From the IMG/VR virus record IMGVR_UViG_3300033153_015063, positions 62,001 through 126,000 of that record: 64,000 nucleotides of DNA, one strand, 5' to 3'. Made by a program: the position numbers and the translations under genes. The notes beneath the pieces are model-generated. The model did not search any database, was not told where the DNA came from, and saw only the letters and a program-made list of their open reading frames with translations. Each line of letters starts with the position of its first letter. Positions within the stretch are counted from its first letter, which is position 1. This document shows positions 33,278 through 63,109 of this stretch, piece by piece.

Positions 33278-34081
33278 TTACCTCTTCTGTTTGTAATCTG
33301 TGAAGTATTTACTCAAAGGCCACGGGACGCCACGGCCATGGCTGCTGTAAAGTATGTCCTGGGCAGCGTTGATACTCTTTGCCCCGGCGTTGTACTTCTT
33401 CACAGCCTTTCCAACGATGGGTTTGAGGCGTTTCAGCTCCTCGATGTCTCTGGCATCAAGCCAAAGACCATAGTTGTAAGAGTTTTCATCATGGTAGCTA
33501 CCAGGGTCCCTCCGTTCTTTGGCGAAAGCTCTGTGATGGTCATAAGCACCCCTGGTCAACCCTTCAGGCGTCATCACCTCTTGAGAGTCATAGGCGATGA
33601 AGAAACGAGCTGCCCTGTCGTCCCAGTCCCAATCGCTTGCATACCCATGCCCTTTTGGTCTCTGCCCATAAACATTGAGATAGGTCATCCCGGCGATACG
33701 TTCCTTTTGGACCTTGTACTTCCCAGGATATTTTTCATCGAGATGCTTCTGGAACGAGGTCTCCATACGCCTACTCGGAGCTTTTCCCTGATACTTGGGT
33801 AGGTGTGTGTCAGCCTCTTTCAAAAGTAGGATACCCTCTTCTTTTTCTTTGATGGATTGGTCGATGGACTTCTTTATCTCCCGGGTATCCAACTTCTCAA
33901 TGGCATCGTAGTTCTTGGAGTGTTCTGGTCTTGGTGTTATCTCTCCAACCATAGCCGCCATGAACTCTCCCTCCGTCAACTGAGGACTGTCTCCCACAGG
34001 TCCCTTGTAGACCGTAGATCCCTCTTCATATTCATAGCGGTATCTATTCCCTGAACCCTCAGGTATCTCTACGGTGGTCAT
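33278..34081 (-). CDS. leader-module protein
   Basis: MTTVEIPEGSGNRYRYEYEEGSTVYKGPVG; upstream 40 bp identical to that of gene 23763. Confidence 0.85.
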   Translation of the reverse strand: MTTVEIPEGSGNRYRYEYEEGSTVYKGPVGDSPQLTEGEFMAAMVGEITPRPEHSKNYDAIEKLDTREIKKSIDQSIKEKEEGILLLKEADTHLPKYQGKAPSRRMETSFQKHLDEKYPGKYKVQKERIAGMTYLNVYGQRPKGHGYASDWDWDDRAARFFIAYDSQEVMTPEGLTRGAYDHHRAFAKERRDPGSYHDENSYNYGLWLDARDIEELKRLKPIVGKAVKKYNAGAKSINAAQDILYSSHGRGVPWPLSKYFTDYKQKR

Positions 34082-34195
34082 CAAGGAATACAATGGGTGT
34101 TGAGTATATAAAGAGTTCGGGAAGATTCTGCATCTCAAATCGGCCGGTGCTGCTTCTCAAAAGAGTCCTACCCAACTTACCCAGCTACCTCCTTT

Positions 34196-34271
34196 TTACG
34201 CTTTTTACAGTTAACCCAGCCCAAACTATATAAAGACCAAGATGCGGGTAAGAGTTAGGTGATGTATGATG
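34196..34271 (+). promoter_or_regulatory. motif + TATA + UTR + RBS unit, copy 1 of 3
   Basis: 45-bp TATATAAAGACCAAGATGCGGGTAAGAGTTAGGTGATGTATGATG at 34227-34271. Confidence 0.9.
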
Positions 34272-35021
34272 GTTACAAAAGTAAAAATCGGAACGACCTT
34301 TCGCTCTGGACTTGCCGATGGAAACCCTCTCTGGAAGATTATCAAGAAAGTAGGATCTCGGCCGGCGACCTATCTCTGCGATGTCGTGAACGAACCCGTT
34401 GAGTTCAACGGAAAGATGTTTGATAGTGACTTCGCTGGCCACTCAGATACCTTCCTCAAGTCAGCAATCGAGCAGAAGCTCAGGTTCTCCGATGCTATCA
34501 ACCATCTGGTGGCCGAAAAAGAATCATTCTGGGACAGCCAGAAAGTTGGAACCACCTACCACTACCAGAGCTCCCGGGGCCAGTGGATTCGGGGAGTGGT
34601 TGATACCCGTGAGGACGACAAAGGTAGGACTGAGAAGTTCCTGAAGTGGACCAACCTTATCGGAGATTGGCGACATGAACTTCCTCAGGTCCGTGCTGAT
34701 GGTTCAGTCTACAAGGGTTACTATATTGAGAACATCGAGAAGGGAGATGGGAACTGTCCAAGTGAATCCCAACTCTATGAGTGTAACTCCGCCAAGTTCT
34801 CTGACAACCCTACCCAGATGGAACCTATCGACCTGACCATCCCCGAACCATCCGAGGATGAAAAGAAGGAACAAGAGCTCTGGCAGAAGGTCAACAAGGT
34901 CCGGGATCTCTTACAGTCCACCAACGAATCCATCAAGTCTGATGGAAAATCCCCCGAACATCTTCTCGATGAAATCAGGGGCGTCGTGGGTCAAGGTTAC
35001 AGACGCCTCTTCAATTTCTGA
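34266..35021 (+). CDS. phage-type hypothetical protein
   Basis: 251-aa ORF with strong promoter and RBS. Confidence 0.8.
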   Translation: MMVTKVKIGTTFRSGLADGNPLWKIIKKVGSRPATYLCDVVNEPVEFNGKMFDSDFAGHSDTFLKSAIEQKLRFSDAINHLVAEKESFWDSQKVGTTYHYQSSRGQWIRGVVDTREDDKGRTEKFLKWTNLIGDWRHELPQVRADGSVYKGYYIENIEKGDGNCPSESQLYECNSAKFSDNPTQMEPIDLTIPEPSEDEKKEQELWQKVNKVRDLLQSTNESIKSDGKSPEHLLDEIRGVVGQGYRRLFNF

Positions 35022-35343: not shown

Positions 35344-36255
35344 TTACGAATCTGATTGTCTGGCCCAGACGACCCAGCCCTGGGCCCTCTTCTGCATCCT
35401 GACAAAGTAACCGGCCTCCCTCCATGCATCCCGGATTGCATCTCCACCACTCCGTTCTTTCATAATGGCGATGACACGGTACTCCTTACCGTCGAACATC
35501 CTTTTGGAATTGATACCAGACTTCTTTGCCTTTGCCTTTGCCTTTTTGGCCTGACGGGCAGTCTTCAGGTTCCGCTTCGCCGCCCGTATCTGTTTCTTTG
35601 ACCTTGGAAGCTTGTGAGCCTCTTTGATGTTCTTCTTTGCCTGCTTCACCTGGGCCGATGTCGGGCGGTCAGAAATCTCGACGTCGATGGGGTCCCAACC
35701 CAGCTTCCCCCGGTACTTGTTGACCATACGGATGGCCTGCTGTTGCTTGGCCTTCGTGGCGAACTCACCCCTACCAGATTGTTTGATAGCGGCCCCGAGT
35801 GTCATGGTCCGTGATTGGAGGGTAGCCATGTTGATACCCTTCCGCCGGTCCTGGTCTATCTGTTCCAGAATCTTTTTCACTTCATCGGTGTGTGACAGAC
35901 CCTCTGGGTCGATGTCCTTTACCTGCCCCTTCGCACCGAGATAGATGGGTTTCCCTGACGCCATCTTTTTCCGTTCTGTGACCCGCTTTTTTGCTCTTCC
36001 CCCACCCTCTGTGGTCTCTCCCGTCCTCTCCCATGAATCTACGTAAGTGGCACGTTCGTCTCGCTTTCGGACCCTGGCGAGTTCCTCCTGGGCTGGCTTG
36101 ATGCGTTCCTCCAGTATGTCCTGGAGAGATTCCATGAACTCAGCCTCCTTCAGTGCCGGGGCCTCTCCCACAGGCCCCTTGTACACAGTTTTACCATTTT
36201 CGTACTCGTACCTGTATCTGTTACCGGACCCTGGTGGAATCTCAACGGTGGTCAT
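35344..36255 (-). CDS. leader-module protein with very basic, possibly nucleic-acid-binding cargo
   Basis: MTTVEIPPGSGNRYRYEYENGKTVYKGPVG; cargo paralogous to gene 43144. Confidence 0.85.
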   Translation of the reverse strand: MTTVEIPPGSGNRYRYEYENGKTVYKGPVGEAPALKEAEFMESLQDILEERIKPAQEELARVRKRDERATYVDSWERTGETTEGGGRAKKRVTERKKMASGKPIYLGAKGQVKDIDPEGLSHTDEVKKILEQIDQDRRKGINMATLQSRTMTLGAAIKQSGRGEFATKAKQQQAIRMVNKYRGKLGWDPIDVEISDRPTSAQVKQAKKNIKEAHKLPRSKKQIRAAKRNLKTARQAKKAKAKAKKSGINSKRMFDGKEYRVIAIMKERSGGDAIRDAWREAGYFVRMQKRAQGWVVWARQSDS

Positions 36256-36416
36256 CGGCTATGGATGAGCTGAGGAGTATTTAAAAGGTTCTCTTTTGAA
36301 GGGATTTACATCCTGTTCAATCTCAAACTATAGGGATGTACATCAAAACTATATAGATACTTACACTTATTTCACATAAAATAAGTTAAAAAGTGATTTA
36401 CTTTTATATCTTGCCT

Positions 36417-36529
36417 CCATAAAAGGGAGTATTTAACCATAGGGGGAAAAAAGATACCCCCCTGTACCATGCTGTAATGAAGCCATCTGCAGTATATAAA
36501 GACTATAGAGATTGAGGCTGGAAATATAT
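36417..36529 (+). repeat. 113-bp inverted repeat, left copy
   Basis: exact reverse complement of 51888-52000. Confidence 0.9.
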
Positions 36530-36953
36530 GTATGACTACAAAATCTCTATATAGATTCAAAAGAGATTTATACACGACTGATATAAAACTACATCGTCTG
36601 TCAACGTATTAGAAACAGATACGTTGAGAAGGTAAACTACTTATATTAGTTGTACAAATACACACAACTACCAATTTCGTCCTGGTGCGGAGTCCTCATC
36701 TCTCCGCACCCACTTTTTTCCCTCTACTCCCATCATCCCCATATACCCCCCTAACCAAAAAGGGGCCCTAATACCCTATATATAATATAGGACCAATAAT
36801 AATAATAATAATAAAAATAGACCCCAAGCTACCATTGAGCTGCTTTCGCTCAGTTTCTTTCAGGCTGCTTTCATATATAAACCCCACGACGCCACATCCA
36901 TCTTACGAACCAAAAACCTTTTAAAACCATAGGCCTTTAAACCCAACGATAGA

Positions 36954-38123
36954 GTGACACACCTGAAGGAGATTCCGAAGGGCAGCGGAAACCTTTACAT
37001 CTACGGTTATAACTCAGGAAAGAAGAGTGATGAATACATAGGGGTCTACTCCAGGGAAAAATGGGTTGAGTTAGCCCTGATGGAGAAGCTACAGAAGAGT
37101 GTCCAGGAACTCAGAGAAATCGAAGGTAGTCGTAGTGAAGATGAACGGGAGGAGGATGAAAGTGAGTTGAACAATGACCTCATCTACCCAGACGACCCAC
37201 GTATCAGAGAGTGGCTCATCGACCCATCCAAACTCGACGTAGTCGGTGTAGACCTCGATCTCAAATCGGTCCGAGATGAAATAATAAGACTCAAAAAGGA
37301 TAGTAAAAGTCTCGAAAGGGAAATAGGTGAGATGGAAAAAATTGGTGTTGAGAAAGAACGTTACGAAAATCTACTCTGGCGTAAAAAGGCAAAGGACCTG
37401 GAATTGAGACAAGCCATTTTCATCGAAAAATTCCCAAACACTACATCTTTCATAGTTTTCAATCCAGAACATATGAAGAACGTCATAAACGGAAAATACA
37501 ACTATGTCCTTCAAATAGGAAAAGAAGTTGATGGTTTTTCTGACCTTGGGATTCCACCACGACACATCTACGACATAGGTATCAACTACTTCAATGGTTC
37601 TCAGGAGAATTATGGGGCAGCTGGATCGTATCAGAGAAAAAATGAACATCACTTGCATGGTCAGTTGACCATACCTTACTATAAAAACAAACGAAAAAAG
37701 GGTCCAACTGAAGATGATAAACATACCATAATCCATGAAGTGGGTCATCACGTCCATACATCTACACTCCTTGGTCACAAAAAATTAAAAAAGTATTACA
37801 CCAAGTGGAACGAAGAGATGCATAAAATATCACTGACAATGCCACCAGCCGGAACCATGTCCAGGGTCCAGGCATATGGGAGTGACCCGCACGAAACGTT
37901 CGCCGAGAGATACGCAACCTATATCGACGGTAAGATGATAACAAATAAACAGATATTAAATAAACAAGTTACAACACTAAAAAGTAAAACTAAATTAACT
38001 AAAAAAGAGAAGAAAGAGATAGAGATATTGGAGGATGAGATAACCGCATCTAAAACGATACTAGATTTTTTCTCTGAAACGTTTAAAGCTATCGAACAAG
38101 TAGACCTCAACAGGAGAGAATGA
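36954..38123 (+). CDS. divergent leader fused to a zincin-like metallopeptidase
   Basis: EIPKGSGNLYIY; IIHEVGHHVH followed by ETFAE. Confidence 0.8.
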   Translation: MTHLKEIPKGSGNLYIYGYNSGKKSDEYIGVYSREKWVELALMEKLQKSVQELREIEGSRSEDEREEDESELNNDLIYPDDPRIREWLIDPSKLDVVGVDLDLKSVRDEIIRLKKDSKSLEREIGEMEKIGVEKERYENLLWRKKAKDLELRQAIFIEKFPNTTSFIVFNPEHMKNVINGKYNYVLQIGKEVDGFSDLGIPPRHIYDIGINYFNGSQENYGAAGSYQRKNEHHLHGQLTIPYYKNKRKKGPTEDDKHTIIHEVGHHVHTSTLLGHKKLKKYYTKWNEEMHKISLTMPPAGTMSRVQAYGSDPHETFAERYATYIDGKMITNKQILNKQVTTLKSKTKLTKKEKKEIEILEDEITASKTILDFFSETFKAIEQVDLNRRE

Positions 38124-39076
38124 CAGTGGCACCAAACGTCGCCAGCATACCACAGTGGGCCAATGGGAAAAAGGGTTGGCTTCTACTACTGGCCATCTTA
38201 ATTGTTGGACTATACATAGCAGCAGATGCCCTCACTGTAAATAATCAGAAAGCCATACTCCTTTTTGAGTGCGATGGAGACGAACCAGACGATTGGGATG
38301 ACAGATGGAACCTACTTGGGAAAAATTCAAGCCATGACCAGGATGAAAGTGGTGGGTACCTGACAGGTTACAACAGGTCATACAATACCACAACCATGGC
38401 CGAAAATGTCCCAGGGGAAGTTTCCAGGGTTTCAATGTGGGCCATAATCAGGGATATAACTGCCATTGACGACGATGCACCTATCTACCACCACCCGGTC
38501 GCTTATGCCCTGGTTTTTGGGGATTCCTGGTTGGCACTATCGGGTAGAATCGGTGTCAACTACTCATCACTCCCCATGTATTACGCATTCATGGTCATAG
38601 ATAGCAACAATGTGATTGTAGGTGTGGCAGAACGTGGGTATCTGATAAAAACTTCATCAGTCGAGATATCTACCGATGTAGAGGAGTGGTTTCACATCAC
38701 AATCAAACTAGAAGGGAACTGCATCCAGGGTTTCACTGGTCTGAACAGCACCGAGAAGGTATGTAACGATGAAGGATTCCCGAGAGAAAGGATAGCAATC
38801 GAGATGAACTCCTACAACAGATTGGACAACATGACAGTAGAGGGATACAAAGAAAGTGGTATTGTAAGGTCAGCATCTGTAATGGGATTCACTTCGATGA
38901 CCTTCCCTGGATGGTTATTGATGCTTGGCACAGGCCTGAGTATGTTGCTTGCTTTATTCCTTGCTGTCTCGCTAAAGGAGTACCCGATGTCCAAATTCAT
39001 GCGGGGATGGTGCATACTCGTGTTCATCTGGTCTGTGGTTCTGGTCCTGATATTTTTACGAATAATAGTGTTGTGA
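38120..39076 (+). CDS. surface protein with a lectin-like domain and two C-terminal TM helices
   Basis: N-terminal TM; WFHITI and IAIEMN...LDNMTV. Confidence 0.75.
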   Translation: MTVAPNVASIPQWANGKKGWLLLLAILIVGLYIAADALTVNNQKAILLFECDGDEPDDWDDRWNLLGKNSSHDQDESGGYLTGYNRSYNTTTMAENVPGEVSRVSMWAIIRDITAIDDDAPIYHHPVAYALVFGDSWLALSGRIGVNYSSLPMYYAFMVIDSNNVIVGVAERGYLIKTSSVEISTDVEEWFHITIKLEGNCIQGFTGLNSTEKVCNDEGFPRERIAIEMNSYNRLDNMTVEGYKESGIVRSASVMGFTSMTFPGWLLMLGTGLSMLLALFLAVSLKEYPMSKFMRGWCILVFIWSVVLVLIFLRIIVL

Positions 39077-43143: not shown

Positions 43144-43641
43144 CTACTTCCCCTTCCTGATGGCTACAGAGAGTGGTTTCCAACCATGACCATCTCTCCA
43201 TTTATTGATTACCACAATGGCTTTTTTCTTCTGTTCATTCGTCATCTTCGAGGTCTGTTCCACAATACCCTTCAATCTCATCGAACGTGCATGTATGGTG
43301 CCCCTGTTAACACCTTCATCCATGTCCTCGTCGAGTTCGATGAGTATGTTTTTGACCTCACGAACATCCGAAAGACCCTTCGGGGCAAAATCTCTGACCT
43401 GCCCAGGTCTACCGAGATAGACATTCTCACCACCTGGTACTACAATCCTCTTCCCTTCGACGTATGTGACACGCCTATCCCTTTCTCTAACACCCACCAC
43501 CTTCATAATCTCCAGGAACTCCCCCTCGTCCAGGGCTGGTGCTTCTCCTACAGGCCCCTTGTACTGAGTTTGTTGTGTGGCCTGGTCATAGACATACCTG
43601 TATTTATTCCCTGAACCTGGAGGGATTTCAACTATGGACAT
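43144..43641 (-). CDS. leader-module protein
   Basis: MSIVEIPPGSGNKYRYVYDQATQQTQYKGPVG. Confidence 0.85.
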   Translation of the reverse strand: MSIVEIPPGSGNKYRYVYDQATQQTQYKGPVGEAPALDEGEFLEIMKVVGVRERDRRVTYVEGKRIVVPGGENVYLGRPGQVRDFAPKGLSDVREVKNILIELDEDMDEGVNRGTIHARSMRLKGIVEQTSKMTNEQKKKAIVVINKWRDGHGWKPLSVAIRKGK

Positions 43642-43702
43642 TACAGACACCTAGGATGATTATGGATGAGCTGAGGAGTATATAAATGTCCCGTTAACTT
43701 AT

Positions 43703-44612: not shown

Positions 44613-45112
44613 CGTAACCAGGAAGATGGCTCAGGATTTTCCCACTTATCCTTAACCTTCTCTACCAATTCATCATCTCTTTTCTGGACCAACTCAGATA
44701 CCTTCATCCCTTTCTCGGTCAGTCCGCCCCAATATTCAGCGTAAGAATATTCTTTAAACATAGTTCTGATTTTCCCTCCAGTTAATCTCCACTCCATCAG
44801 ACCTTTTCGTTCCATTACCTTATAGGTGACCATTGGATAAAGGATGTGTTGTCCTCTACTTATATGGAAGTTAGTGTCTGAATCTACATCCCACCCTTTT
44901 CTCCCAAACAGTATAAGAACTTCCTTCTGTGTAGGGGAAAGTTCTTTGTAGATTTCTTCGATTTCTTTATTCTCAGTACCCATCCCCTTCAAGAACTCAG
45001 CCTCTCCCAGCTCAGGAGAATCCCCGACCGGCCCCTTGTACTGTGTCTTGCCGCCTTCATATTCGTAGCGGTATCTATTCCCTGAGCCTGGTGGAATCTC
45101 TACAGTGGTCAT
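44609..45112 (-). CDS. leader-module protein, possible winged-helix cargo
   Basis: MTTVEIPPGSGNRYRYEYEGGKTQYKGPVG; LSPTQKEVL...LTEKG. Confidence 0.85.
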   Translation of the reverse strand: MTTVEIPPGSGNRYRYEYEGGKTQYKGPVGDSPELGEAEFLKGMGTENKEIEEIYKELSPTQKEVLILFGRKGWDVDSDTNFHISRGQHILYPMVTYKVMERKGLMEWRLTGGKIRTMFKEYSYAEYWGGLTEKGMKVSELVQKRDDELVEKVKDKWENPEPSSWLR

Positions 45113-45267
45113 TGGTTGGAGATAACCGGGAGGCTATTTAAAGATTGGTAGAAAAGTATGACACCCGGCGTCGCTGTCATCACGGAGTCCGTTGACAGCA
45201 ACACCAGGGTCTGGCTGGGCAAACCCACCTGATAATAACTTGAGCTCTCTTTGTTCTTAAATGTTTT

Positions 45268-45651: not shown

Positions 45652-46224
45652 CTACTCCTCGGCCTCGAAATCCTCTTCCTCAAGGTCAGCAAGTCGATCC
45701 TCTATCTCCTCTAATCTATTGTCAATAGCATTATCCTCTTTTTTCAGTTGCAGGACCTTTCTTTTCAGGTCTGTGACATGCGTCCTATTCTCAGCAGCAT
45801 TGTCACTCACAGATTCTATTTCAAATTCTATGATGCTGAATGCTTTGTTCTGTTCGTTGTCGATGACTATAATAGCGTCGACAACGTTCTCTATCTTCTC
45901 CTGGTCGGTTTGGGTTTCCTCTATGTCGTCTTCTATCTCTTCGAGTTGATTGACGACCCGGCCGGCAGCATCTTTGAAACCCCCTACACCCTCCAATACT
46001 TTCGGCCTCGGTGGATCAAAATCTCTCCAGTCATCGACCCACTCCACAAAATCTCCGACCCCGACAACTACATCATCGTCAATTCCCATCATCTCCAGGA
46101 ACTCCTCCTCATCCAGGGCTGGTGCATTGCCGACCGGCCCCTTGTAGACCGTAGCCTTGGTCTCAGCATCATAGACGTATTTGTATCTGTTACCGCTTCC
46201 AGGAGGGATTTCGACTATGGACAT
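45652..46224 (-). CDS. leader-module protein with acidic coiled-coil cargo
   Basis: MSIVEIPPGSGNRYKYVYDAETKATVYKGPVG. Confidence 0.85.
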   Translation of the reverse strand: MSIVEIPPGSGNRYKYVYDAETKATVYKGPVGNAPALDEEEFLEMMGIDDDVVVGVGDFVEWVDDWRDFDPPRPKVLEGVGGFKDAAGRVVNQLEEIEDDIEETQTDQEKIENVVDAIIVIDNEQNKAFSIIEFEIESVSDNAAENRTHVTDLKRKVLQLKKEDNAIDNRLEEIEDRLADLEEEDFEAEE

Positions 46225-46280
46225 TAAAGGATGATAGGGGTGGGAGGATAAGAAGATTGTGGTAGGTCATAGGTCACTAC

Positions 46281-46688
46281 CTAAAACTCCACTTGAAGCT
46301 CGTTGTAATAGTCCCGAGGGCTTTTCGGGGAACGGCCGGCAATCAAATCACTGTTGAATAAATCGACCATATCACCGATAGTATCAGCAGCCCTATTTAA
46401 ATAATCTTCACAATCTGTATCACAATCTATAGGTAAATCTAACTGTTTTAACTGTTCAGATGTTATATAGTCATTGATATATGCATTATCGTCCTCTGCA
46501 AATTGTGAAAAGAAATATGTTAATCCAGACATCTGATAATGGTTCACCGTATTCCTGAACATCTCCAGGAACTCCCCCTCGCTCATCTCAGGAGAATCCC
46601 CGACCGGCCCCTTGTAGACCGTAGCTCCCTCTTCATATTCATAGCGGTATCTGTTACCTGAGCCAGGAGGGATCTCGACAATGGTCAT
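46281..46688 (-). CDS. leader-module protein with AT-rich cargo
   Basis: MTIVEIPPGSGNRYRYEYEEGATVYKGPVG. Confidence 0.85.
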   Translation of the reverse strand: MTIVEIPPGSGNRYRYEYEEGATVYKGPVGDSPEMSEGEFLEMFRNTVNHYQMSGLTYFFSQFAEDDNAYINDYITSEQLKQLDLPIDCDTDCEDYLNRAADTIGDMVDLFNSDLIAGRSPKSPRDYYNELQVEF

Positions 46689-46824
46689 CAAGGAATAGAA
46701 GGGGTGGTGGGTATAAAAATGTGATGGTGGGGTGTGGTGGGTGCCCCGGTTCCTTCATTTCTATCTTCCATTTTCCATCACTACTCAATTTTTTCATTTA
46801 ACTTACAACTAATTATATGAATGG

Positions 46825-47859: not shown

Positions 47860-48678
47860 TCATTCATTAATTTTACTTCCATCACCTTCAATATACAGTG
47901 CTATTCTACTATAGTTCCTGTCAAGTACTGCACGAACACCACCAGCTCTCCATCCCTTCTTTCGTCTGGTAACTATTCCCATTTTCTCCAACTCAGAGGC
48001 TATCTCTGATGCGTTCAGACCCTTTTCATCCAGTTCCCTGATGATAACGATGACTGTCTGTTCATCTTCTCTCTCAATCAATCTGGTGTTTTCTTTTTTG
48101 AGAACACCGCCACCCTTGTCGACTACATCGGATTTGACTTTGTAGCCATATGGTGCCTGCCCCACCCACTCTCCTGAACGCTGTTTTTGTTTGACACCTC
48201 GACGGGTATGCTGAGAAATCTTCATCCTCTCGTACTCTGCCATGTTGACCAGTTGCACGAACACAGAACGCCCCTCGGCTGTCCAAAGATCCAGGAATCT
48301 TACGGACTTGATAACCAACCTGACGCCGTATTTCCTGAGCTCATCCAGCATCCATAGGGCTTCCTTCACATCCCTCCCGAAACGATCCTCTTTTGCCACC
48401 GCAACGATGTCAAAAGCACGTTCCCTGGCGTCCGCAAGGAGTTGCTGGATCGCTTCTCTCTTCTCGATAGATGAACCCGTTTCCTCATCAGAGTAGGTCC
48501 TGGTCCATCTCCACCCACTTTCCTCATCGCACCATTCCTTGATTTCCTTCTCCTGGGCAGGTAGTGAGAAACGCCCTGAGATGAGTTTGTCGGACTTGCG
48601 AATGTATGCGACCACGATGAAACTCGGGCCGTCTTGTTCAAGCTTTGCGGTTGACAACTGAAATTTTGTACTGGGCAA
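47860..48678 (-). CDS. serine recombinase (resolvase domain plus recombinase-type C-terminus)
   Basis: AYIRKS catalytic motif; YSDEETGS...R; DRFGR; GQAPYGY. Confidence 0.9.
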   Translation of the reverse strand: MPSTKFQLSTAKLEQDGPSFIVVAYIRKSDKLISGRFSLPAQEKEIKEWCDEESGWRWTRTYSDEETGSSIEKREAIQQLLADARERAFDIVAVAKEDRFGRDVKEALWMLDELRKYGVRLVIKSVRFLDLWTAEGRSVFVQLVNMAEYERMKISQHTRRGVKQKQRSGEWVGQAPYGYKVKSDVVDKGGGVLKKENTRLIEREDEQTVIVIIRELDEKGLNASEIASELEKMGIVTRRKKGWRAGGVRAVLDRNYSRIALYIEGDGSKINE

Positions 48679-48866: not shown

Positions 48867-49265
48867 ATGGACGAAGTTAAGGTGGACCAAACCAAGCTAC
48901 TCAAACTCTCAAGGGAAGAGCTCGTATCGGCCCTGTTTGATGCATGGGACGAGATCAAGGAAGAAAGAAAGGTGAGTAGTCGTGAGATAGAGATATTGGA
49001 GAAGAAGGTTGAATCCCTGGAGAAAAAAACCGAAGGGACCGGGGAACTCATGCCAAAAGAGTCGGTTAGTGGTAAGGTGACCGAGTATGATGAAGAAAAG
49101 AATATTTTTTACTTTGAGAGTACCGATGGTGAAGTGATAATAGCCCCAGCATCTGTATTTCCGATTGACGCTGTAGGTAGGTGGTATGAACTTCATATTC
49201 GCCGTATCCATTCATCAGGTAAGGTCGGAAAGTGGATAAAAATTATTCCGACCTATGGTATGTGA
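48867..49265 (+). CDS. coiled-coil protein between the two recombinases
   Basis: GAGGTGG RBS; N-terminal heptads. Confidence 0.75.
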   Translation: MDEVKVDQTKLLKLSREELVSALFDAWDEIKEERKVSSREIEILEKKVESLEKKTEGTGELMPKESVSGKVTEYDEEKNIFYFESTDGEVIIAPASVFPIDAVGRWYELHIRRIHSSGKVGKWIKIIPTYGM

Positions 49266-49282
49266 TGGGATGGATGTAAATA

Positions 49283-50233
49283 ATGTCAGAAACACGTAAA
49301 CGAGTGGCGATGTATATCAGGGTCTCAATCGACGAACAATCCAGGGATGGATACGATGTCAAGTCCCAGGTCAGAAATCTTCGCAATTATATTGCTATGA
49401 AAGAAGGGTGGATTGAAGGTTGGGAATATAGTGATGATGGTTACGATTGTGATGAGAAAAGGCCGGCTTATGAACGGTTGTGGGATGAAATAGATGAATG
49501 GGATGTTCTTCTCATCTGGAAGTTGGACCGTATCCACAATGACATGCCAGGTTTACTGAACATGGGCATCAAACTGGCAGACAACGACAAGGACCTGGCG
49601 TCAGTCAGTGAACTTATCGACACCACTTCTGACATGGGCCGTCATCTCTATCACATCTTCGGAGCTCTGATCCAATTCGAGAACAAAAACCCACGTTCTG
49701 TCTCTCTACCCCATCCTACTTTCATTGATGATGGAGTAGTGGCCGATAGTCAAGAAGTGGAAGTTCCTACCCCTGAAACAGGAACGCCGGTAGCTACGCT
49801 TACAGGTAAGTGGATAACATCTCCACCATTTGGTTATGATATTGACAAAGAACCAGAGTCAAAGGGCCACCTGGTCGTGAACGAGGAAGAAAGTAATGTT
49901 GTTAGATACATCTTCTATCTACGGTTCAAGTTAGAGAACCCCGACTTATTCAAACCATATCAGTGGGATAGTAAGAGAGCCGGCCTCAATGTCCCATACT
50001 ACCGCACCTACCAGGACATCGCAGACCTACTCCACGACAAAGGTATCAGAACAAAGAAGGGAAAGCGATGGACTCCTTGTGCCATCAGAAGGGTCTGTGT
50101 TAACCCCATCTACTGGGGTATATTCAGGTACGGGAGTGAAGAAATGTTGGGTGGACATGAACAATTAACCCCCGAACCAGGTACTGCGGCGATGGGTGAG
50201 TGGGATTGGAAACCGCCCGATGGAGAAGAGTAA
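49283..50233 (+). CDS. serine recombinase
   Basis: MYIRVSIDEQ; RPAY; WKLDRI; PPFGY; IA..L...GI.T..G..W; NPIYWG. Confidence 0.9.
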   Translation: MSETRKRVAMYIRVSIDEQSRDGYDVKSQVRNLRNYIAMKEGWIEGWEYSDDGYDCDEKRPAYERLWDEIDEWDVLLIWKLDRIHNDMPGLLNMGIKLADNDKDLASVSELIDTTSDMGRHLYHIFGALIQFENKNPRSVSLPHPTFIDDGVVADSQEVEVPTPETGTPVATLTGKWITSPPFGYDIDKEPESKGHLVVNEEESNVVRYIFYLRFKLENPDLFKPYQWDSKRAGLNVPYYRTYQDIADLLHDKGIRTKKGKRWTPCAIRRVCVNPIYWGIFRYGSEEMLGGHEQLTPEPGTAAMGEWDWKPPDGEE

Positions 50234-50530
50234 ATGTCTTTCATTACATCTGAAGGACTCGAACTTGCTACTGAAAGCAGAAGGATAGTAAGTAGCAAGC
50301 GAGGGTCCTACTACGAGTTTGATGACGAACACATACTGAAGGTGAATATCTACGTTCCTGAAGAAGAAGAGTGGCGTCTTACCACTGACTATGTTTACTA
50401 CCATGAGTATCGTTCATGTGACGATGCATATGTGAAGCTCTACTATCAACGTCGCTTTGTCTCTTATGCTGACTACTGGGTTGGGAGATGGTATATCTCC
50501 GTTGATGATGTTACTGAGGTCGATAACTGA
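50234..50530 (+). CDS. Tyr-rich hypothetical protein
   Basis: abuts the recombinase stop codon. Confidence 0.65.
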   Translation: MSFITSEGLELATESRRIVSSKRGSYYEFDDEHILKVNIYVPEEEEWRLTTDYVYYHEYRSCDDAYVKLYYQRRFVSYADYWVGRWYISVDDVTEVDN

Positions 50531-50883
50531 TTTACGCTTTTTACAGTTGAACAATCGTAAGACCGTTGTTGTCACAATCGGTCCTATTTCAATAGTTTAA
50601 TATTCTCTGAAGTAGTTGACGCTATCAAGAACGTTGGTGGGAGTATCAGACTGTAACCCTATGATATGTCCAGGGTTTCCAAAACCACACCCGCTACTTT
50701 TCCACCATGGCCGTCAAGCTACCCCAGGCCATCCTTTCCTGGTGGGTTTACCCGGATACGATTGTTAGATATAAACTGTCTCTTATAAAAATGTATCTTG
50801 TTTGCATCAAACGTATTGGTGAGATGTTTATAAAGGAACTGTAAAATATCAGGCATCTTATAAAAGTCCTGTACCATCACGTG

Positions 50884-51042
50884 AGAGCTTTATATACTCA
50901 CAAGTAGGCCAGAGCTTTATATACTCACAAGTAGGCCAGAGCTTTATATACTCACAAGTAGGCCAGAGCTTTATATACTCACAAGTAGGCCAGAGCTTAT
51001 ATACTCACAAGTAGGCCAGAGCTTTATATACTCACAAGTAGG
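50884..51042 (+). repeat. 6 x 27-bp tandem repeat AGAGCTTTATATACTCACAAGTAGGCC
   Basis: units start at 50884, 50911, 50938, 50965, 50992 (one T missing) and 51018 (partial). Confidence 0.95.
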
Positions 51043-51083
51043 TTACGTTCTTTACGGTATTGGCCTAAGATACGTTTCTAATG

Positions 51084-51800
51084 TGTAGTAGTAGTGTAGT
51101 AGTAGTAGGTAGTAGTGTAGTAGTAGTAGGTAGTAGTGTAGTAGTAGTAGGTAGTAGTGTAGTAGTAGTGTAGTAGTGTAGTAGTAGTAGGGTAGGTAGT
51201 AGTGGAATTAAATGTGAAGCACTGTGGATGGGGTAGGTAAGATAGGTAGGTAACGGAATTAAATGTGAGACAGTAGATGCCGTAATAATAGTAATAGTAG
51301 TAATAACTGTAACAGGAAAATTAAATGTTATCAGTCAGTACACAGTTGTTTGGCACTATGGTAACCAAATTAAATGAAATCAGTTCACTCTCAAAAGCGT
51401 AATTTTTGAAATTCTACCATCCCGTACACACGTGTATGGCAAGGAGATAGTTAGTAAGTAGTAGTAGTGGTAGTAGATAGGGTAGATAGGGTAGTAGAAT
51501 TAAATGAAATATGGTAGGTAGTAGTAGGTAGTAGTAGGTAGTAGTAGGTAGTAGTAGTAGGTAGTAGTAGGTAGGTAGGTGGTAGGGTCAGAATTAAATG
51601 AAATAGGGTAGTAGGGGGTAGTAGTAGGGTAGTAGGGGGTAGTAGTAGGTCAGAATTAAATGAAATAGGGTAGTAGGGGGTAGTAGTAGGGTAGTAGGGG
51701 GTAGTAGTAGGGTAGTAGGGGGTAGTAGTAGATAAGGTAGGTAGGGTAGGTGGGTCAGAATTAAATGAAAGTAGGTATGATGTATCAGTAGTGGTAGTAG
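51084..51800 (+). repeat. GTA/GGTA low-complexity tract with 8 AATTAAATG boxes; candidate origin or terminal region
   Basis: + strand is G-rich and C-poor; no ORFs. Confidence 0.8.
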
Positions 51801-51887
51801 CTAATGGTTGTAATTTCTGTTAGTTATACTGGGCTTATGTCCAAGGAATTATATAAGAGTAAGACCTATAAAACCCCTATAGGCCCT

Positions 51888-52000
51888 ATATATTTCCAGC
51901 CTCAATCTCTATAGTCTTTATATACTGCAGATGGCTTCATTACAGCATGGTACAGGGGGGTATCTTTTTTCCCCCTATGGTTAAATACTCCCTTTTATGG
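51888..52000 (-). repeat. 113-bp inverted repeat, right copy
   Basis: exact reverse complement of 36417-36529. Confidence 0.9.
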
Positions 52001-52134
52001 GGTTGGTTCTATGGAAGTATATTTCTGAAATCGAGGCTGAGTTATACTGACTATAGAGACAGCGGCATCGTAATCCATAGGAATTTACCATGACCCAGAA
52101 GTTATGTATAGGTAAGGTTTGGTACTGTAGTTAG

Positions 52135-52389
52135 TTATTCTACGATCTTTCTGGGGTTACCATCATCCCCAAGTGTATATCTGTTACCAGATCCATAAGG
52201 AAATTCAATCACCCCGGTGTTTTTCTTGCGATGGATCTTACATTTTGGGCACCACGAGAGTTTTCCTGCATCCCTCAACTTGGTGTCACACTCGGGGCAC
52301 CAACCCTGGATTAGTTCCAATGCACCTTTCAAAGCAGTCATACTGACTTCTCTGCCCACTCTTTTTGTCCTCCTATACTTTGGACCCAT
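52135..52389 (-). CDS. zinc-ribbon protein with a leader-like motif at the C-terminus
   Basis: CPEC...CPKCKIH followed by VIEFPYGSGNRY. Confidence 0.7.
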   Translation of the reverse strand: MGPKYRRTKRVGREVSMTALKGALELIQGWCPECDTKLRDAGKLSWCPKCKIHRKKNTGVIEFPYGSGNRYTLGDDGNPRKIVE

Positions 52390-59865: not shown

Positions 59866-60674
59866 TTGAGGTCACCCTTCAGTCTTCCCATGACATCTGT
59901 CATATATTCTTTTCCTTCCTTGGACCAGAGTGGGTCGGTAGATGGGTGGACTTCGAGTTGGTAACCAAGTATTCCCGACGCCGTCCTGAGAATGTCGTGT
60001 TCTACGGAGTTCTTTCGCACGATGAACATGGATTTTCTCTTCAGTTTATGTTCATGGATGAACCGGGCAAGATTCTTGCCAGAGTGATTTATACTGTCGC
60101 GGTACGCCCTCCAGTCCCATTTCATGTCGTGCTTCTCGTTGAACTGACGTTGCCAACCTGGTGTTGCAATGTGAGGACGTATTGGGAAGTAATCTTCTGG
60201 AATTGGCCCAAGTGTTTTTGAAAGTGCAAAGGTATTGACATCATCTGGTCTGAACCCTACTTTATCCATAGCCTGATAGTAATTTTTGAAGGAAGGAACA
60301 GTATCTTTTGCTCTAACCCATCTTGGTTCAGGCGACTCCGGGATGAACACTACAAAGTCTTCTGCTTTTATAGGATAATCCATAACAATTTTCTGCCATT
60401 CTTTGACATGCCTGCTAGTGGCTAGGTCGGCGACCTCACTGATATTGAAAGCGGTTAACTCCGGTTCGATGTCTGGATTCTGTGATAATGTTTCTGATAA
60501 TAATCTATCCCGGAGTTTTTGTTCTTTCTGGCCAACAACCTGGAACATCTCCAGGAACTCCCCCTCCGAAAGCTCCGGGGCCGTGCCGACCGGCCCCTTG
60601 TACACAGTCTTGCCGTCTTCGTACTCGTACTTATAGCGGTTGCCGCTTCCAGGAGGGATTTCAACTATGGACAT
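59862..60674 (-). CDS. leader-module protein
   Basis: MSIVEIPPGSGNRYKYEYEDGKTVYKGPVG. Confidence 0.85.
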   Translation of the reverse strand: MSIVEIPPGSGNRYKYEYEDGKTVYKGPVGTAPELSEGEFLEMFQVVGQKEQKLRDRLLSETLSQNPDIEPELTAFNISEVADLATSRHVKEWQKIVMDYPIKAEDFVVFIPESPEPRWVRAKDTVPSFKNYYQAMDKVGFRPDDVNTFALSKTLGPIPEDYFPIRPHIATPGWQRQFNEKHDMKWDWRAYRDSINHSGKNLARFIHEHKLKRKSMFIVRKNSVEHDILRTASGILGYQLEVHPSTDPLWSKEGKEYMTDVMGRLKGDLN

Positions 60675-61009
60675 TACAGACACCTAGGATGATTATGGAT
60701 GAGCTGAGGAGTATATAAAATGTTTGATGGGGAGTGAGGAGGTGGGAGGTGGTGGGAGGATGGGTCGATTTGGGAGAGTAGTGTGAAAAATACCTGGGTT
60801 TGTCTACCGACAGTCACCTATCTCGTATCACTACGAGGTTTGTTACGCCCTCCGCATCAGCTTCGGCCCCAACCGGGTGTCTCTTTTGGTATCCTTCACG
60901 ATACGTTTCATCATCAGGTGTCCTTTTAAAGATTGTGTGATAGGTGATAGGTAATAGACACCAATAACCAACAGAACTCTTTATATCCTCCCTCCCCTAT
61001 CACTCTTCA

Positions 61010-61759
61010 ATGACCACTGTAGAAATCCCACCAGGTAGTGGTAATCATTACCGCTATGTCTACGAAGAGGGAGCTACGGTCTACAAGGGGCCGGTCGGCA
61101 ATGCACCTGAGCTGAGTGAGGATGAGTTCATGGCTATTCTGGGGCGTAGTAATCTAAAGGAACATCCCCGCTACGATACCTACAAATGGACACTTAATAC
61201 AACTAAGCAACAAAATCCTGGATACTCCAACGAGTATTATATCTGGCAGACACTTTCAATCCTATCTGGTAGACTTTCTCATCAGGAGATGGTATCTCTC
61301 GATACTGCATTGGTTGAAGATGGTGTATGGAAGCAGAAAGCCTATATCGTCGAAGTAGACGGAAAGGAGATGGATAAGTTTTGGTGGGATAAGGATACTA
61401 CGAAGGTAGTCAGAAAAAGTGTACTGCGTTCTGGTGAAGGTTTCATGGGTGAGATAGTCACTGTAGACCCGAGAGACGAAGGTATCTCAACAGCATATCA
61501 TCCTGACCAGAACCTAACCACAGGTCTTCCACTTTTTCGATGGAAAGAGTTTATCCCTGGTGGTCTTGGGGCCGGTAAACACCCCGCCAACTTCGACCCT
61601 GACCAGATACGGAAGGGCATCAATGTTGAGATGGAGCACGTGGTTGGTTCCACTTCACTTACAGAACAGGAAAAGATTCGAGTAGCGGCCGAGATAGCCA
61701 CTGACCATCTTATGGAAGACCCGAAATACTACGATAAACTGGAAACCCTGGGTTTGTAA
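61010..61759 (+). CDS. leader-module protein with a C-terminal DUF5661-like domain
   Basis: QIRKGINVEMEH...IATDHLMEDPKYYDKL. Confidence 0.8.
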   Translation: MTTVEIPPGSGNHYRYVYEEGATVYKGPVGNAPELSEDEFMAILGRSNLKEHPRYDTYKWTLNTTKQQNPGYSNEYYIWQTLSILSGRLSHQEMVSLDTALVEDGVWKQKAYIVEVDGKEMDKFWWDKDTTKVVRKSVLRSGEGFMGEIVTVDPRDEGISTAYHPDQNLTTGLPLFRWKEFIPGGLGAGKHPANFDPDQIRKGINVEMEHVVGSTSLTEQEKIRVAAEIATDHLMEDPKYYDKLETLGL

Positions 61760-61807: not shown

Positions 61808-62476
61808 ATGACCACCGTTGAGATTCCTGAGGGCTCAGGCAACCGCTACAGGTACGATTACGACGCCAGTACCAAAGGCACTGTGTATAAGGGGCCTGTA
61901 GGGAATAGTCCTGGGCTTTCGGAGGAGGAGTTTCTGAGGGTTATTCAACAAACCATTGGTGGGCATGAAGCGTCGGCTAGCTCTGTGATGGGAACTCCGG
62001 CGAAGCGTGGTACCTACGTCGAACCAGACGATGATGAGCTCGGATGGGATTTCAATGATGAATGGGATTTTGTCCATGACCTGTCAGATGACAGTGAACG
62101 GCAGACGGGGACCGGCCTTCTCATAGAGAAGAGTGGTGACACTGTTACAATCATCGAGTGGACCGAGGCATCAGGTCTCATCGAGGAGTTCGAGGACCCC
62201 GAAGCCACCGTTATCAAACAAGAGGCGAGGGTGGACTTGAGTGATCTACTCGACCCAGAACAACCACATCTCAGTCCTGCGTCCTACGGCGAGGGTAGAG
62301 ACTATGATGACGCCTTCAACACCTACAAGAGGATACAGAAGGCAAAATACTACGAGCAGACCGATGATGTCTACAGACTCGAAAAAGAGTTGAAAGACAT
62401 CATCGTAGAAGCTGCTATCTCCTGGATGGGTCATTGGGGTGGGGATGAAGAGTTCGTGACCGATGTCGGTGACTGA
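61808..62476 (+). CDS. leader-module protein with acidic cargo
   Basis: MTTVEIPEGSGNRYRYDYDASTKGTVYKGPVG. Confidence 0.85.
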   Translation: MTTVEIPEGSGNRYRYDYDASTKGTVYKGPVGNSPGLSEEEFLRVIQQTIGGHEASASSVMGTPAKRGTYVEPDDDELGWDFNDEWDFVHDLSDDSERQTGTGLLIEKSGDTVTIIEWTEASGLIEEFEDPEATVIKQEARVDLSDLLDPEQPHLSPASYGEGRDYDDAFNTYKRIQKAKYYEQTDDVYRLEKELKDIIVEAAISWMGHWGGDEEFVTDVGD

Positions 62477-62541
62477 CCACCAACATAAACCGCTTGATTT
62501 ACCTTCCGTTTTGTATTTTCAAAAAAAGCAGGAAAGAACCA

Positions 62542-63109
62542 ATGACCATAGTCGAAATCCCCCCAGGTTCAGGGAATAAATACAGGTACGTTTACGAACA
62601 ATCAAGTCAGGACACTGTCTACAAGGGGCCAGTAGGCCAGGCCCCGGAACTGGGACGACGACCATCAACACGCCCCAGATATTTCTATTGATGGAACGAT
62701 CTATGCTGTAGAGGAGAGAATCCCTGAGTCCGTTTGGCTCTCGGCACGTCGGTGGGTGTTCAGTTCCGATCCCAGGGACAAGGAGAGCTTGATAGACGCC
62801 TATAACGGCTTGTCAGACCGCCAGAAAACGGTCATAGCGACGGATGTGAGGGAAACCTTTCGTCGGGTCTATAACGCTGATAAAACCACCATTTTTCGGT
62901 CCTTTCGGGGGCATGAGGTTGATATGGGTGGGTTGTCGGTCACTGATGAAAGATCAACCAGAGTTGGAACTGATGTTAGGGCTTTCGAGGTCTCCCATAG
63001 CGACGTAATGCTTCACTATGCCCAGGATGAGTCACCTCTGGAATCCAGGGCCTTTGGACATGAACGGGAGATTATACTCAGACCTGATGCTAACCCAATA
63101 CCAATCTGA
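62542..63109 (+). pseudogene. frameshifted leader-module gene with ADP-ribosyltransferase-like cargo
   Basis: leader frame stops at 62691; removing one G at 62652-62654 joins it to the open frame ending at 63109; IFRS, LSVT and EREIIL motifs. Confidence 0.65.

What the first reader, a model, noticed from the sequence alone, without database searches (positions are those of the whole stretch)
51084..51800. Strand-biased GTA/GGG tract punctuated by eight AATTAAATG boxes
Seen: boxes near 51206, 51257, 51319, 51368, 51498, 51592, 51654 and 51759 are separated by variable (GTA)n and GGGTAGTAGGGGG spacers. Positions 51606-51755 carry many G3-G5 runs compatible with G-quadruplexes. Inference: a replication origin, telomere-like or packaging region with constant protein sites and slippage-prone spacers.
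Basis: partly seen in the sequence, partly recalled or inferred. Interest (0 to 1): 0.6.

Follow-up and report, generated by a model that had tools for sequence, protein, structure and literature searches.

The report
Promoter-derived repeat tract in archaeal virus
The largest gene-free stretch of a 243-kb, probably archaeal, virus genome is a real, strand-biased repeat tract that appears to have grown by copy-slippage from the virus's own promoter parts and carries eight identical short sites with no known binding partner; nothing shows it to be a telomere, and nothing yet shows it to be a replication origin.

Summary
Eight exact AATTAAATG boxes sit on the + strand at the stated positions (0.57 expected by chance). 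Two arms are almost free of C. The tract lies in the largest non-coding gap of a 242.6-kb, circularly assembled IMG/VR virus record.

The promoters look archaeal: a BRE/TATA element sits 30 nt before the ATG in about 80 genes. The tract is not coding and not a structured RNA. No canonical G4 motif (loops up to 7 nt) is present.

The gap seems to be built from the virus's own promoter-module parts, all in + orientation:
- six tandem 27-bp TATA cores;
- two G/T/A microsatellite arms that begin at the initiator-proximal element of decayed modules and share the composition and k-mers of the virus's C-poor leaders;
- eight invariant copies of AATTAAATGnnA, found only at this locus, whose flanks have diverged.

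My best reading is a slippage-expanded, transcription-linked protein-site array that is prone to R-loops. Its use is undecided: origin, decoy RNA or nothing.

Skew shows no origin here. The candidate terminase is 120 kb away. The tract is internal to the contig, so it is not a telomere. No reads, transcripts or relatives could be obtained, so function remains inference. Interest is moderate.

The parts
47860..48678 (-). Serine recombinase gene (272 aa). Context only.
   Evidence: Pfam Resolvase 2.2e-27.
49283..50233 (+). Second serine recombinase gene (316 aa). It is the middle gene of the three-gene + cassette (48867-50530) that ends at the gap. Context only.
   Evidence: Pfam Resolvase 1.1e-18 plus Recombinase. 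The catalytic domain resembles TP901-1 integrase.
50532..50548 (+). Upstream-element copy (TTACGCTTTTTACAGTT, with a T5 run) directly after the + cassette, not followed by a TATA. Likely a terminator or module remnant.
   Evidence: Matches the genome-wide module element. A 25-nt match to genome 200352-200376.
50884..51042 (+). A 27-bp unit repeated 5.9 times in tandem. Each unit carries a canonical BRE/TATA core (GCTTTATATACTCA) in + orientation, so these would be tandem promoters firing towards the tract.
   Evidence: TRF score 311, 98% matches. The promoter PWM scores 7.6-8.4 on the + strand only, with predicted starts at 50919 to 51053. The same 13-mer core occurs in real leaderless promoters of the paralog family.
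51043..51059 (+). Degenerate upstream element (3 mismatches) of a decayed + oriented promoter module. The left arm starts where that module's initiator-proximal element would lie.
   Evidence: The spacing inference is by eye.
51084..51205 (+). Left arm: a C-free (GTA)n-type microsatellite with a 21-nt super-period.
   Evidence: 0 C in 122 nt. Periods of 3 and 21.
51206..51214 (+). Box 1, AATTAAATG.
51257..51265 (+). Box 2.
51319..51327 (+). Box 3.
51368..51376 (+). Box 4.
51388..51403 (+). Inverted fragment of the upstream element (AAAAGCGTAA) followed by a T5 run. This is a likely archaeal-type terminator for + strand transcripts, lying between the two arms.
   Evidence: Sequence. Compared with the modules.
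51446..51800 (+). Right arm: a G/T/A-only array that opens with GTTAGTAAG, the initiator-proximal motif of canonical modules. It contains boxes 5-8, 21-nt units and two perfect 62-nt units (51586-51709).
   Evidence: 4 C in 355 nt and the highest G-run density in the genome. Perfect 62-nt copies. The most RNA:DNA-hybrid-favouring 300-nt window of the genome if the RNA is the + strand.
51498..51506 (+). Box 5.
51592..51600 (+). Box 6.
51654..51662 (+). Box 7.
51759..51767 (+). Box 8.
51888..52000 (+). Right copy of a perfect 113-nt inverted repeat whose partner is at 36417-36529. It holds a TATA core and the first 18 codons of a small outward-reading ORF (51947-52093), and marks the right edge of the non-coding gap.
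   Evidence: 100% complementary over 113 nt. The TATA-to-ATG spacing of 30 nt matches the leaderless class.

Best explanation
What it is. The tract is the core of a 1.4-1.7-kb non-coding control region, the largest gene-free gap of a 242.6-kb virus that uses archaeal-type promoters. It looks assembled from the virus's own promoter-module parts, all pointing rightwards (+):
- six tandem 27-bp copies of a canonical BRE/TATA core;
- two C-free G/T/A arms that start at the initiator-proximal element (GTAAGAG or GTAGTAG type) of decayed modules. These arms have the base composition and k-mers of the virus's C-poor leaders, so they read as leader and initiator sequence amplified by replication slippage into 3-, 21- and 62-nt arrays;
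- eight copies of AATTAAATGnnA, a site found only here. The core is invariant while the flanks have diverged beyond alignment, which points to a sequence-specific binding site.

How it most likely works (inferred, not shown). The tandem promoters fire into the arms. The product is an unstructured, C-free, G-rich RNA whose hybrid with the C-rich template is unusually favourable, and the displaced strand is full of G-runs. The locus should therefore stay open and prone to R-loops. The boxes would recruit a viral or host factor to that open DNA.

What the open, protein-loaded region is used for cannot be decided here. The candidates are priming of replication as in T4, T7 or ColE1, a decoy or sponge RNA, or nothing any more.
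For: Shown:
- The gap at window 50531-52216 is the largest in the genome.
- There is no ORF with a start codon in the tract.
- There is no Rfam or tRNA match and no significant RNA fold (z -0.9, -1.1, -1.8).
- The genome-wide promoter grammar was derived from 39 upstream-element modules and 82 genes with an A/T block exactly 31-28 nt before the ATG.
- The 27-bp units score as promoters only in + orientation.
- Class-1 leaders are A .325, T .245, C .097, G .333. The tract is A .329, T .282, C .050, G .339. The arms' commonest 5-mers are enriched 3-15 fold in those leaders relative to the genome. That is stronger than the resemblance of the - strand to leaderless spacers, which is 1.2-4.3 fold.
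- The right arm opens with the canonical GTTAGTAAG motif, and the left arm follows a degenerate upstream element at the expected distance.
- The box core is invariant in 8 of 8 copies, against 66% mean column identity overall, and is unique to this locus.
- The right arm is the most hybrid-favouring 300-nt window of the genome for a + strand RNA.
- The gap is among the 1% least stable duplex windows.

Precedent: promoter-carrying intergenic repeats with alpha/beta/gamma motifs are established in archaeal tailed virus HF2 (PMC8707807).
Against: - There are no expression data, reads or relatives, so the direction and even the existence of transcription are inferred.
- A T5 run at 51398-51402 would stop + strand transcripts before the right arm.
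- The box is not used as a TATA by any gene. It scores as a promoter only weakly, and in the opposite orientation (6.2-7.9).
- Box spacing (49-130 bp) is irregular and not helically phased.
- Part of the box conservation is recent duplication: boxes 6 and 7 lie in identical 62-nt units.
- A decayed, slippage-prone promoter graveyard with no present function would look much the same.
Confidence: 0.4

Rival explanations
1. Replication origin. The boxes act as iterons for an initiator. The G-rich arms and tandem promoters provide transcription-primed or R-loop opening, as in T4 oriF/oriG, the T7 primary origin or ColE1.
For: - It is the largest non-coding region.
- It has eight conserved sites found only at this locus.
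- Tandem promoters point into it.
- It is hybrid-favouring and has low duplex stability.
Against: - There is no inflection in cumulative GC skew, and no orientation-corrected skew switch at genome 113 kb.
- No Cdc6_C match was found in the genome, and the flanking ORFs scanned carry no known initiator domain.
- The replication genes lie far away, at genome 0.3-46 kb and 148-225 kb.
- The boxes are irregularly spaced.
- No ORB-like elements were seen.
Confidence: 0.2
2. Neutral debris. A decayed cluster of promoter modules in a recombination-prone accessory region, where GTAGTAG-type motifs seeded microsatellite expansion. The boxes are alike only because the units were duplicated recently.
For: - There are perfect 62-nt and near-perfect 21- and 27-nt units.
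- Decayed upstream-element and TATA remnants lie inside the gap.
- The neighbourhood is full of duplicated promoters, paralogs and inverted repeats.
- No function-specific signature was found.
Against: The boxes fall into three sub-families whose flanks are no longer alignable, yet all keep the same 9-mer plus the A at +3. The genome is otherwise 90% coding by my ORF map, and the next largest gaps are 453-698 bp. A 1.4-kb dead zone would therefore be unusual.
Confidence: 0.25
3. Packaging signal or physical genome end (a pac site or terminal-repeat region), with the boxes as small-terminase sites.
For: Large non-coding regions with short repeat arrays and tandem promoters flank the ends of T7-type genomes (my own knowledge). 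The 64-bp end overlap of the contig says nothing about the true termini.
Against: - The only terminase-like ORF is weak (phrog_2666, E 0.003) and lies at genome 233.9-235.6 kb, about 120 kb away.
- Terminase_6N, Terminase_6C and TerL_ATPase give no hit.
- No reads were available to look for termini.
Confidence: 0.08
4. Target or accessory-site array for one of the two adjacent serine recombinases, or the centromere for the genome's orphan ParA.
For: Two serine recombinase genes lie within 3.3 kb of the tract. ParA at genome 142478-143596 has no repeat array beside it. Direct-repeat centromeres of the R1 parC and F sopC kind are known (my own knowledge).
Against: - The box has no dyad symmetry, and no inverted set exists elsewhere.
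- All copies are direct repeats, which would cause deletion rather than inversion.
- ParA is 29 kb away.
- The spacing is irregular.
Confidence: 0.07
5. Assembly artefact: a low-complexity stretch mis-joined or mis-sized by a short-read assembler.
For: Exact 21-, 27- and 62-nt repeats are hard to size from short reads. No reads could be laid on the region.
Against: The tract contains unique sequence between boxes 1-4 and ordered, diverged sub-families. It is flanked by intact genes in a contig that closes on itself. An artefact could alter copy numbers, but it would not create this architecture.
Confidence: 0.04

Closest known systems
Intergenic promoter repeats of haloarchaeal tailed virus HF2 (class I 58-bp and class II 29-bp IRs, plus its boxed bidirectional promoter region)
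   Same: Both have dispersed, highly conserved modules with an upstream motif, a TATA-containing motif and a motif spanning the start site. This genome has 39 such modules (PMC8707807). The 27-bp unit here is a TATA core of similar size to HF2 class II repeats. HF2 also has a non-coding region with three 12-bp direct-repeat boxes.
   Different: Here the TATA units are tandemly amplified six times. The initiator and leader part has expanded into about 480 nt of C-free microsatellite. The eight boxes are not promoter motifs used anywhere else. No sequence similarity to any phage or archaeal virus record was found.
Transcription-primed origins (T7 primary origin with tandem promoters 1.1A/1.1B, T4 oriF/oriG R-loop origins, ColE1 RNA II)
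   Same: One or more promoters are directed into a non-coding element whose transcript can stay hybridised. Here a G-rich RNA would pair with a C-rich template.
   Different: There is no evidence of initiation here and no skew signal. A T5 terminator lies between the arms. The comparison rests on my own knowledge, not on a test.
Iteron origins and direct-repeat centromeres of plasmids and phage-plasmids (R6K, P1, F sopC, R1 parC)
   Same: Several identical short sites lie in one orientation within a non-coding region.
   Different: Those sites are longer (11-43 bp), regularly phased, and next to the gene of the protein that binds them. Here the core is 9-12 bp, the spacing is 49-130 bp, and no Rep or ParB gene is adjacent.
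G-rich R-loop and G4-forming repeat regions (immunoglobulin switch regions, mitochondrial CSB II)
   Same: Both show strong G over C asymmetry on the non-template strand, clustered G-runs and tandem units downstream of promoters.
   Different: Those are eukaryotic or organellar. Here no canonical G4 motif with short loops is present.
Perfect tandem repeats of Borg elements and other large archaeal extrachromosomal elements
   Same: Near-perfect tandem repeats lie in intergenic DNA of a large element with archaeal-type signals, most of whose genes are on one strand.
   Different: This genome has few such arrays. The tract is an interrupted array with constant boxes rather than a simple perfect tandem repeat. 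I made no test of relationship.

Membership tests
Iteron-type replication origin | Several copies of a 17-22-bp site, regularly spaced and helically phased | tested here: not met
   The invariant core is 9 nt plus one base. Spacings are 51, 62, 49, 130, 94, 62 and 105 bp, with no common phase.
Iteron-type replication origin | Adjacent initiator gene | tested here: not met
   The neighbours are two serine recombinases and small proteins, including zinc-ribbon-like ones, that carry no initiator domain. There is no Cdc6_C match in the genome.
Iteron-type replication origin | Easily unwound AT-rich element beside the sites | tested here: inconclusive
   The gap lies in the least stable ~1% of windows but is not the genome minimum.
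Replication origin or terminus in general | Switch of compositional skew | tested here: not met
   Cumulative GC skew falls steadily with no turn at the tract. GC3 skew corrected for gene orientation shows no switch beyond permutation. The AT3 switches lie near genome 5 and 88 kb. Skew is a weak test in viruses.
Transcription-primed (R-loop) origin | Promoter directed into the element | tested here: inconclusive
   Five 27-bp units score as promoters in + orientation (7.6-8.4) and the first scores 8.4. No transcript data exist.
Transcription-primed (R-loop) origin | Persistent RNA:DNA hybrid and initiation of DNA synthesis | not testable with these tools
   There is only an in-silico hybrid-versus-duplex energy ranking.
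Telomere or terminal repeat | Located at the physical end of a linear genome | tested here: not met
   The tract is at 113 kb of a 242.6-kb contig whose ends overlap by 64 bp. The true termini are not testable without reads.
Canonical G-quadruplex motif | Four G3+ runs with loops of 1-7 nt | tested here: not met
   There is none in the tract. Two motifs appear only when loops up to 12 nt are allowed.
pac/cos packaging site | Next to terminase genes, with read termini at the site | tested here: not met
   The weak terminase-like ORF is 120 kb away, and three terminase Pfam families give no hit. Termini are not testable.
Archaeal virus intergenic promoter repeats (HF2 type) | Conserved TATA-containing motif at a fixed distance upstream of genes or start sites | tested here: met
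   This is met for the genome-wide modules and for the core of the 27-bp units. It is not met for the eight boxes, which no gene uses.
CRISPR array | Repeats of 23-50 bp separated by unique spacers of similar length | tested here: not met
   The constant part is 9-14 nt. The spacers are low-complexity and vary from 40 to 121 nt.
Protein-coding repeat | Open frame with a start codon | tested here: not met
   The + strand is full of TAG stops. The - strand frames are open only because that strand has almost no G, and they lack any ATG, GTG or TTG.
Structured non-coding RNA | Rfam match or a fold better than shuffles | tested here: not met
   There is one sub-threshold Rfam hit, outside the tract. 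Fold z-scores are -0.9, -1.1 and -1.8.

The most novel reading that the evidence does not exclude
The locus is a replication origin of a jumbo archaeal virus that works without a classical initiator. A six-fold tandem promoter drives a C-free, G-run-rich transcript that forms a stable R-loop, with G4 structures on the displaced strand. This opens the duplex and primes DNA synthesis, and the eight AATTAAATGnnA boxes load a virus-specific factor.
Probability: 0.13. Interest if true: 0.65.

Novelty: new variant of a known kind. Interest (0 to 1): 0.38.

Why it matters
Non-coding control regions of archaeal viruses are almost unstudied. No origin, packaging site or centromere is known for any large one. 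This locus offers a compact test object:
- a 62-bp unit with a defined invariant box, suitable for pull-down of its binding factor;
- a natural six-fold tandem archaeal promoter;
- a 350-nt C-free stretch that should show whether R-loops or G4 structures form in an archaeal virus.

It also shows how a microsatellite can arise from a promoter's own initiator motif. If the tract turns out to have no function, the lasting value is the promoter grammar worked out for this 243-kb genome. That grammar marks the element as archaeal. To my knowledge its size is well beyond that of cultivated archaeal viruses, though I did not check this here.

Tried and rejected
Reads and transcripts
- The look-up of sequencing runs listed no run, so read laying was never used. 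Read support, termini and expression could not be tested.

Relatives
- The box 16-mer gave only single chance hits in IMG/VR.
- A 24-mer from the tract gave 0 hits.
- The promoter-module pattern gave 0 hits in viral and metagenome contigs.
- The 27-bp unit gave 0 hits in metagenome contigs.
- The flanking 437-aa protein matched only itself among 5.8 billion proteins and in IMG/VR.
- PolB has no close relative in IMG/VR.
- The region gave no blastn or megablast hit in the phage records.
- Relatives cannot be drawn for a virus record.
- The GyrB scan of genomes gave one uninformative 43% hit.

Readings considered and rejected
- Coding sequence.
- tRNA or an Rfam family.
- Structured RNA.
- C/D-box sRNA (by eye: the strand carrying CUGA has no box C).
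- CRISPR-like array.
- Box as an ordinary TATA element.
- Palindromic att or res site in the tract.
- A salt-in halophile host, rejected because the median pI is 5.9.
- The AT-rich 21-bp repeat region at window 23069-23540 as a rival iteron origin. It is coding: a VISPTPT linker inside a 271-aa protein.

Other points
- The 113-nt inverted repeat as ends of a transposon: I saw no target-site duplication by eye, and both copies are promoter plus ORF-start modules.
- No genetic code other than table 11 was used. Stop-codon usage is ordinary.

Full report
**Where the tract lies**

The window is bases 62001-126000 of a 242,596-bp IMG/VR virus record. Its ends overlap by 64 bp, and CheckV rates it 100% complete. 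The finding is therefore at genome 113,084-113,800.

A greedy ORF map gives 90% coding. The largest gap in that map, 1,686 bp, is window 50531-52216. The next largest gaps are 453-698 bp.

On the left, a short + strand cassette of three ORFs ends at 50530. Its middle gene is a serine recombinase (49283-50233), and a second recombinase gene lies at 47860-48678 on the - strand. On the right, - strand genes run from 52135 onwards. A small leaderless + ORF may start at 51947. If it is real, the truly non-coding part is about 50531-51946.

**Check of the observation**

All eight AATTAAATG boxes are exact, on the + strand, at the stated coordinates. The chance expectation is 0.57, and none of 100 shuffles reaches 8. 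The rest of the genome has one copy, inside a gene on the other strand.

The tract has three parts:
- a left arm, 51084-51205, with no C in 122 nt;
- a centre of ordinary composition, 51206-51445, with boxes 1-4 and 32 C;
- a right arm, 51446-51800, with 4 C in 355 nt and boxes 5-8.

Periodicities of 3, 21 and 62 nt are present, and two 62-nt units are identical.

The G-run density at 51606-51755 is the highest in the genome. However, no G4 motif with loops of 7 nt or less exists there. Two appear only if loops up to 12 nt are allowed.

The spacers around boxes 1-4 are not low-complexity. The G4 reading needs long loops.

**What kind of genome this is**

The replication proteins found are PolB, an RFC-like clamp loader, GyrB, topoisomerase IA, SNF2 and other helicases, a class II ribonucleotide reductase and a FEN-type nuclease.

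PolB and the clamp loader find haloarchaeal tailed viruses as their best matches in the phage records, at about 30% identity. The Atlas neighbours of PolB are Uroviricota and archaeal clusters.

The strongest argument for an archaeal host is the promoter grammar:
- 82 genes carry an A/T block starting exactly 31-28 nt before the ATG. They have a purine-rich element just upstream of it and no Shine-Dalgarno sequence. This is the signature of leaderless archaeal transcripts.
- A second class consists of 39 modules. Each has an upstream element (TTACGCTTTTTACGGTT), then a TATA element (TATATAAAG), then an initiator-proximal motif (GTAAGAG, or GTAGTAG in some, including the tRNA-Leu gene), then AGGTGATG and the ATG.

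This three-part layout parallels the alpha, beta and gamma motifs of the promoter-carrying intergenic repeats of halovirus HF2 (PMC8707807).

Two cautions apply. The proteome is not acidic (median pI 5.9), so the host is not a salt-in halophile. Virion genes are barely recognisable:
- 20 large ORFs gave no meaningful PHROG hit, apart from one weak terminase-like match at genome 233.9-235.6 kb.
- Three terminase Pfam models gave nothing.

"Virus" therefore rests mainly on the IMG/VR label.

**What the gap is made of**

Reading the gap against the promoter grammar is informative.
- Directly after the + cassette there is a perfect upstream element with its T5 run and no TATA (50532).
- At 50884-51042, a 27-bp unit is repeated 5.9 times. 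Each unit carries the same 13-nt TATA core as the real leaderless promoters of a paralog family. A weight matrix built from the 82 leaderless promoters scores these units 7.6-8.4 in + orientation only.
- At 51043 there is a degenerate upstream element. The left arm begins about where that module's initiator-proximal motif should be.
- The right arm opens with GTTAGTAAG, the canonical form of that motif, preceded by what looks like a mutated TATA (alignment by eye).

The leaders of class-1 modules have almost the same composition as the tract: C .097 against .050, and G .333 against .339. The arms' commonest 5-mers are 3-15 times enriched in those leaders relative to the genome. The alternative resemblance, between the - strand of the arms and the pyrimidine-rich spacers of leaderless promoters, is weaker at 1.2-4.3 fold.

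I infer that the arms are initiator and leader sequence of + oriented modules, amplified by replication slippage.

**The boxes**

The boxes are different. Aligned with 20-nt flanks, the eight copies share only the 9-mer and an A three bases later. They fall into three sub-families (1-2, 3-4 and 5-8) whose flanks are otherwise unalignable. This argues for constraint on the core, although boxes 6 and 7 are recent copies.

No gene uses this sequence as its TATA element, and no near-copy lies in any other intergenic region. The promoter matrix gives only weak scores, and only in - orientation. The box has no dyad symmetry, and its spacing is irregular.

It is best described as a locus-specific binding site whose partner is unknown.

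**What it is not**

- It does not code for protein. The + strand is full of TAG stops. The - strand frames are open only because that strand has almost no G, and they have no start codon.
- It is not a tRNA or a known RNA family.
- It has no fold better than shuffled controls. The right arm as RNA is essentially unstructured.
- It is not at a genome end.

**Function**

If the tandem promoters fire rightwards, the transcript is C-free and G-rich. The right arm is the most favourable 300-nt window of the genome for an RNA:DNA hybrid relative to the DNA duplex (nearest-neighbour values from memory). The gap is also among the least stable 1% of duplex windows. The locus should therefore be prone to staying open, and the boxes would load a factor there.

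That picture fits a transcription-primed origin, but the direct tests available do not support an origin:
- there is no skew turn at 113 kb;
- no Cdc6_C match was found in the genome, and the flanking ORFs scanned carry no known initiator domain;
- the replication genes are far away;
- a T5 run separates the arms.

A packaging role is unlikely, because the candidate terminase sits on the opposite side of the circle. A role as a recombinase target or as the ParA centromere has only proximity, or the lack of an alternative, in its favour. A neutral "promoter graveyard" remains a serious rival.

No reads, transcripts or relatives could be obtained. The functional statements are therefore inference.

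**Verdict**

This is a real and unusual non-coding feature. It is best understood as a slippage-expanded derivative of the virus's own promoter modules, punctuated by a conserved binding site found only here. It is a new variant of the known class of viral intergenic repeat and control regions. Its functional labels are unsupported (origin, packaging) or contradicted (telomere).

Noticed in passing
whole genome (G000, 242,596 bp): The element uses archaeal-type signals: a BRE/TATA element exactly 30 nt before the ATG in about 80 leaderless genes, and GGTGAT ribosome sites in the class-1 modules. Its PolB and clamp loader are nearest to haloarchaeal tailed viruses. At 243 kb it would, to my knowledge, be far larger than any cultivated archaeal virus. 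Capsid and terminase genes are barely detectable, so a giant plasmid-like element is not excluded.
   Followed up: partly
genome 187177-188241, 209190-211049, 197258-198241; methylases at 2537-5279, 35816-38386, 178067-179155: A thymidine-hypermodification gene set is present: a 5-hmdU DNA kinase, a long thymidylate-synthase-like protein and a PEP-utiliser mobile domain. At least six N6/N4 DNA methyltransferases accompany it. The DNA is probably heavily modified.
   Followed up: no
genome 172573-174225: A Ro60/TROVE protein with a vWA domain. I did not look for a Y-RNA partner.
   Followed up: no
window 36417-36529 and 51888-52000: A perfect 113-nt inverted repeat brackets 15.4 kb that contains both serine recombinase genes and the tract. 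Each copy is a promoter plus the first 18 codons of a small outward-reading ORF. The segment may be invertible, or the repeat may just be a duplicated module. This cannot be tested without reads.
   Followed up: partly
window 33950-34272, 36120-36286, 43493-43686, 44970-45144, 46076-46739, 60532-60719, 61004-61143, 61808-61918, 62537-62653: A multi-copy paralog family with N-termini like MTTVEIPPGSGNRY. Its promoters are near-identical duplicates, up to 99% over 71 nt. There is no Pfam match except DUF5661 in one member.
   Followed up: partly
window 60725-60795 and genome 215752-215858: Two further C-free, G-rich low-complexity tracts (GGA/GGT type) lie beside the 5' ends of - strand paralog genes. 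One is upstream and one downstream of the TATA element, so their relation to transcription is unclear.
   Followed up: partly
window 29337-32729: A 1130-aa protein with 17 thrombospondin type 3 repeats and a PKD domain. Several other PKD or fn3 proteins lie nearby.
   Followed up: yes
window 23069-23540: The least stable, most AT-rich DNA of the genome, with four perfect 21-bp repeats. It looked like an iteron origin but is coding: a VISPTPT linker inside a 271-aa protein. An AT3-skew switch lies near genome 88 kb.
   Followed up: yes
genome 60859-60947 (just outside the window): A tRNA-Leu(taa) sits directly behind a class-1 promoter module, with GTAGTAG in the promoter-proximal position. tRNA-Pro, tRNA-Lys and tRNA-Ala genes lie elsewhere in the genome.
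   Followed up: yes
window 51212-51217, 51263-51268, 51598-51606, 51660-51668: The ATG of each box opens a tiny ORF: ATG-TGA twice and ATG-AAA-TAG twice, with others of 5-25 codons. This recalls phage minigenes. The spacing to any ribosome-site-like motif is poor, so I take it as coincidence.
   Followed up: partly
L138:181-200 (IMG/VR contig of 5,276 bp, high GC): This is the only other record with the 20-nt upstream element of the promoter modules, again in front of a gene. It may be a shared regulator site or chance.
   Followed up: no
genome 28445-30223: A 592-aa ORF with a TnpB/Cas12f-type domain.
   Followed up: no
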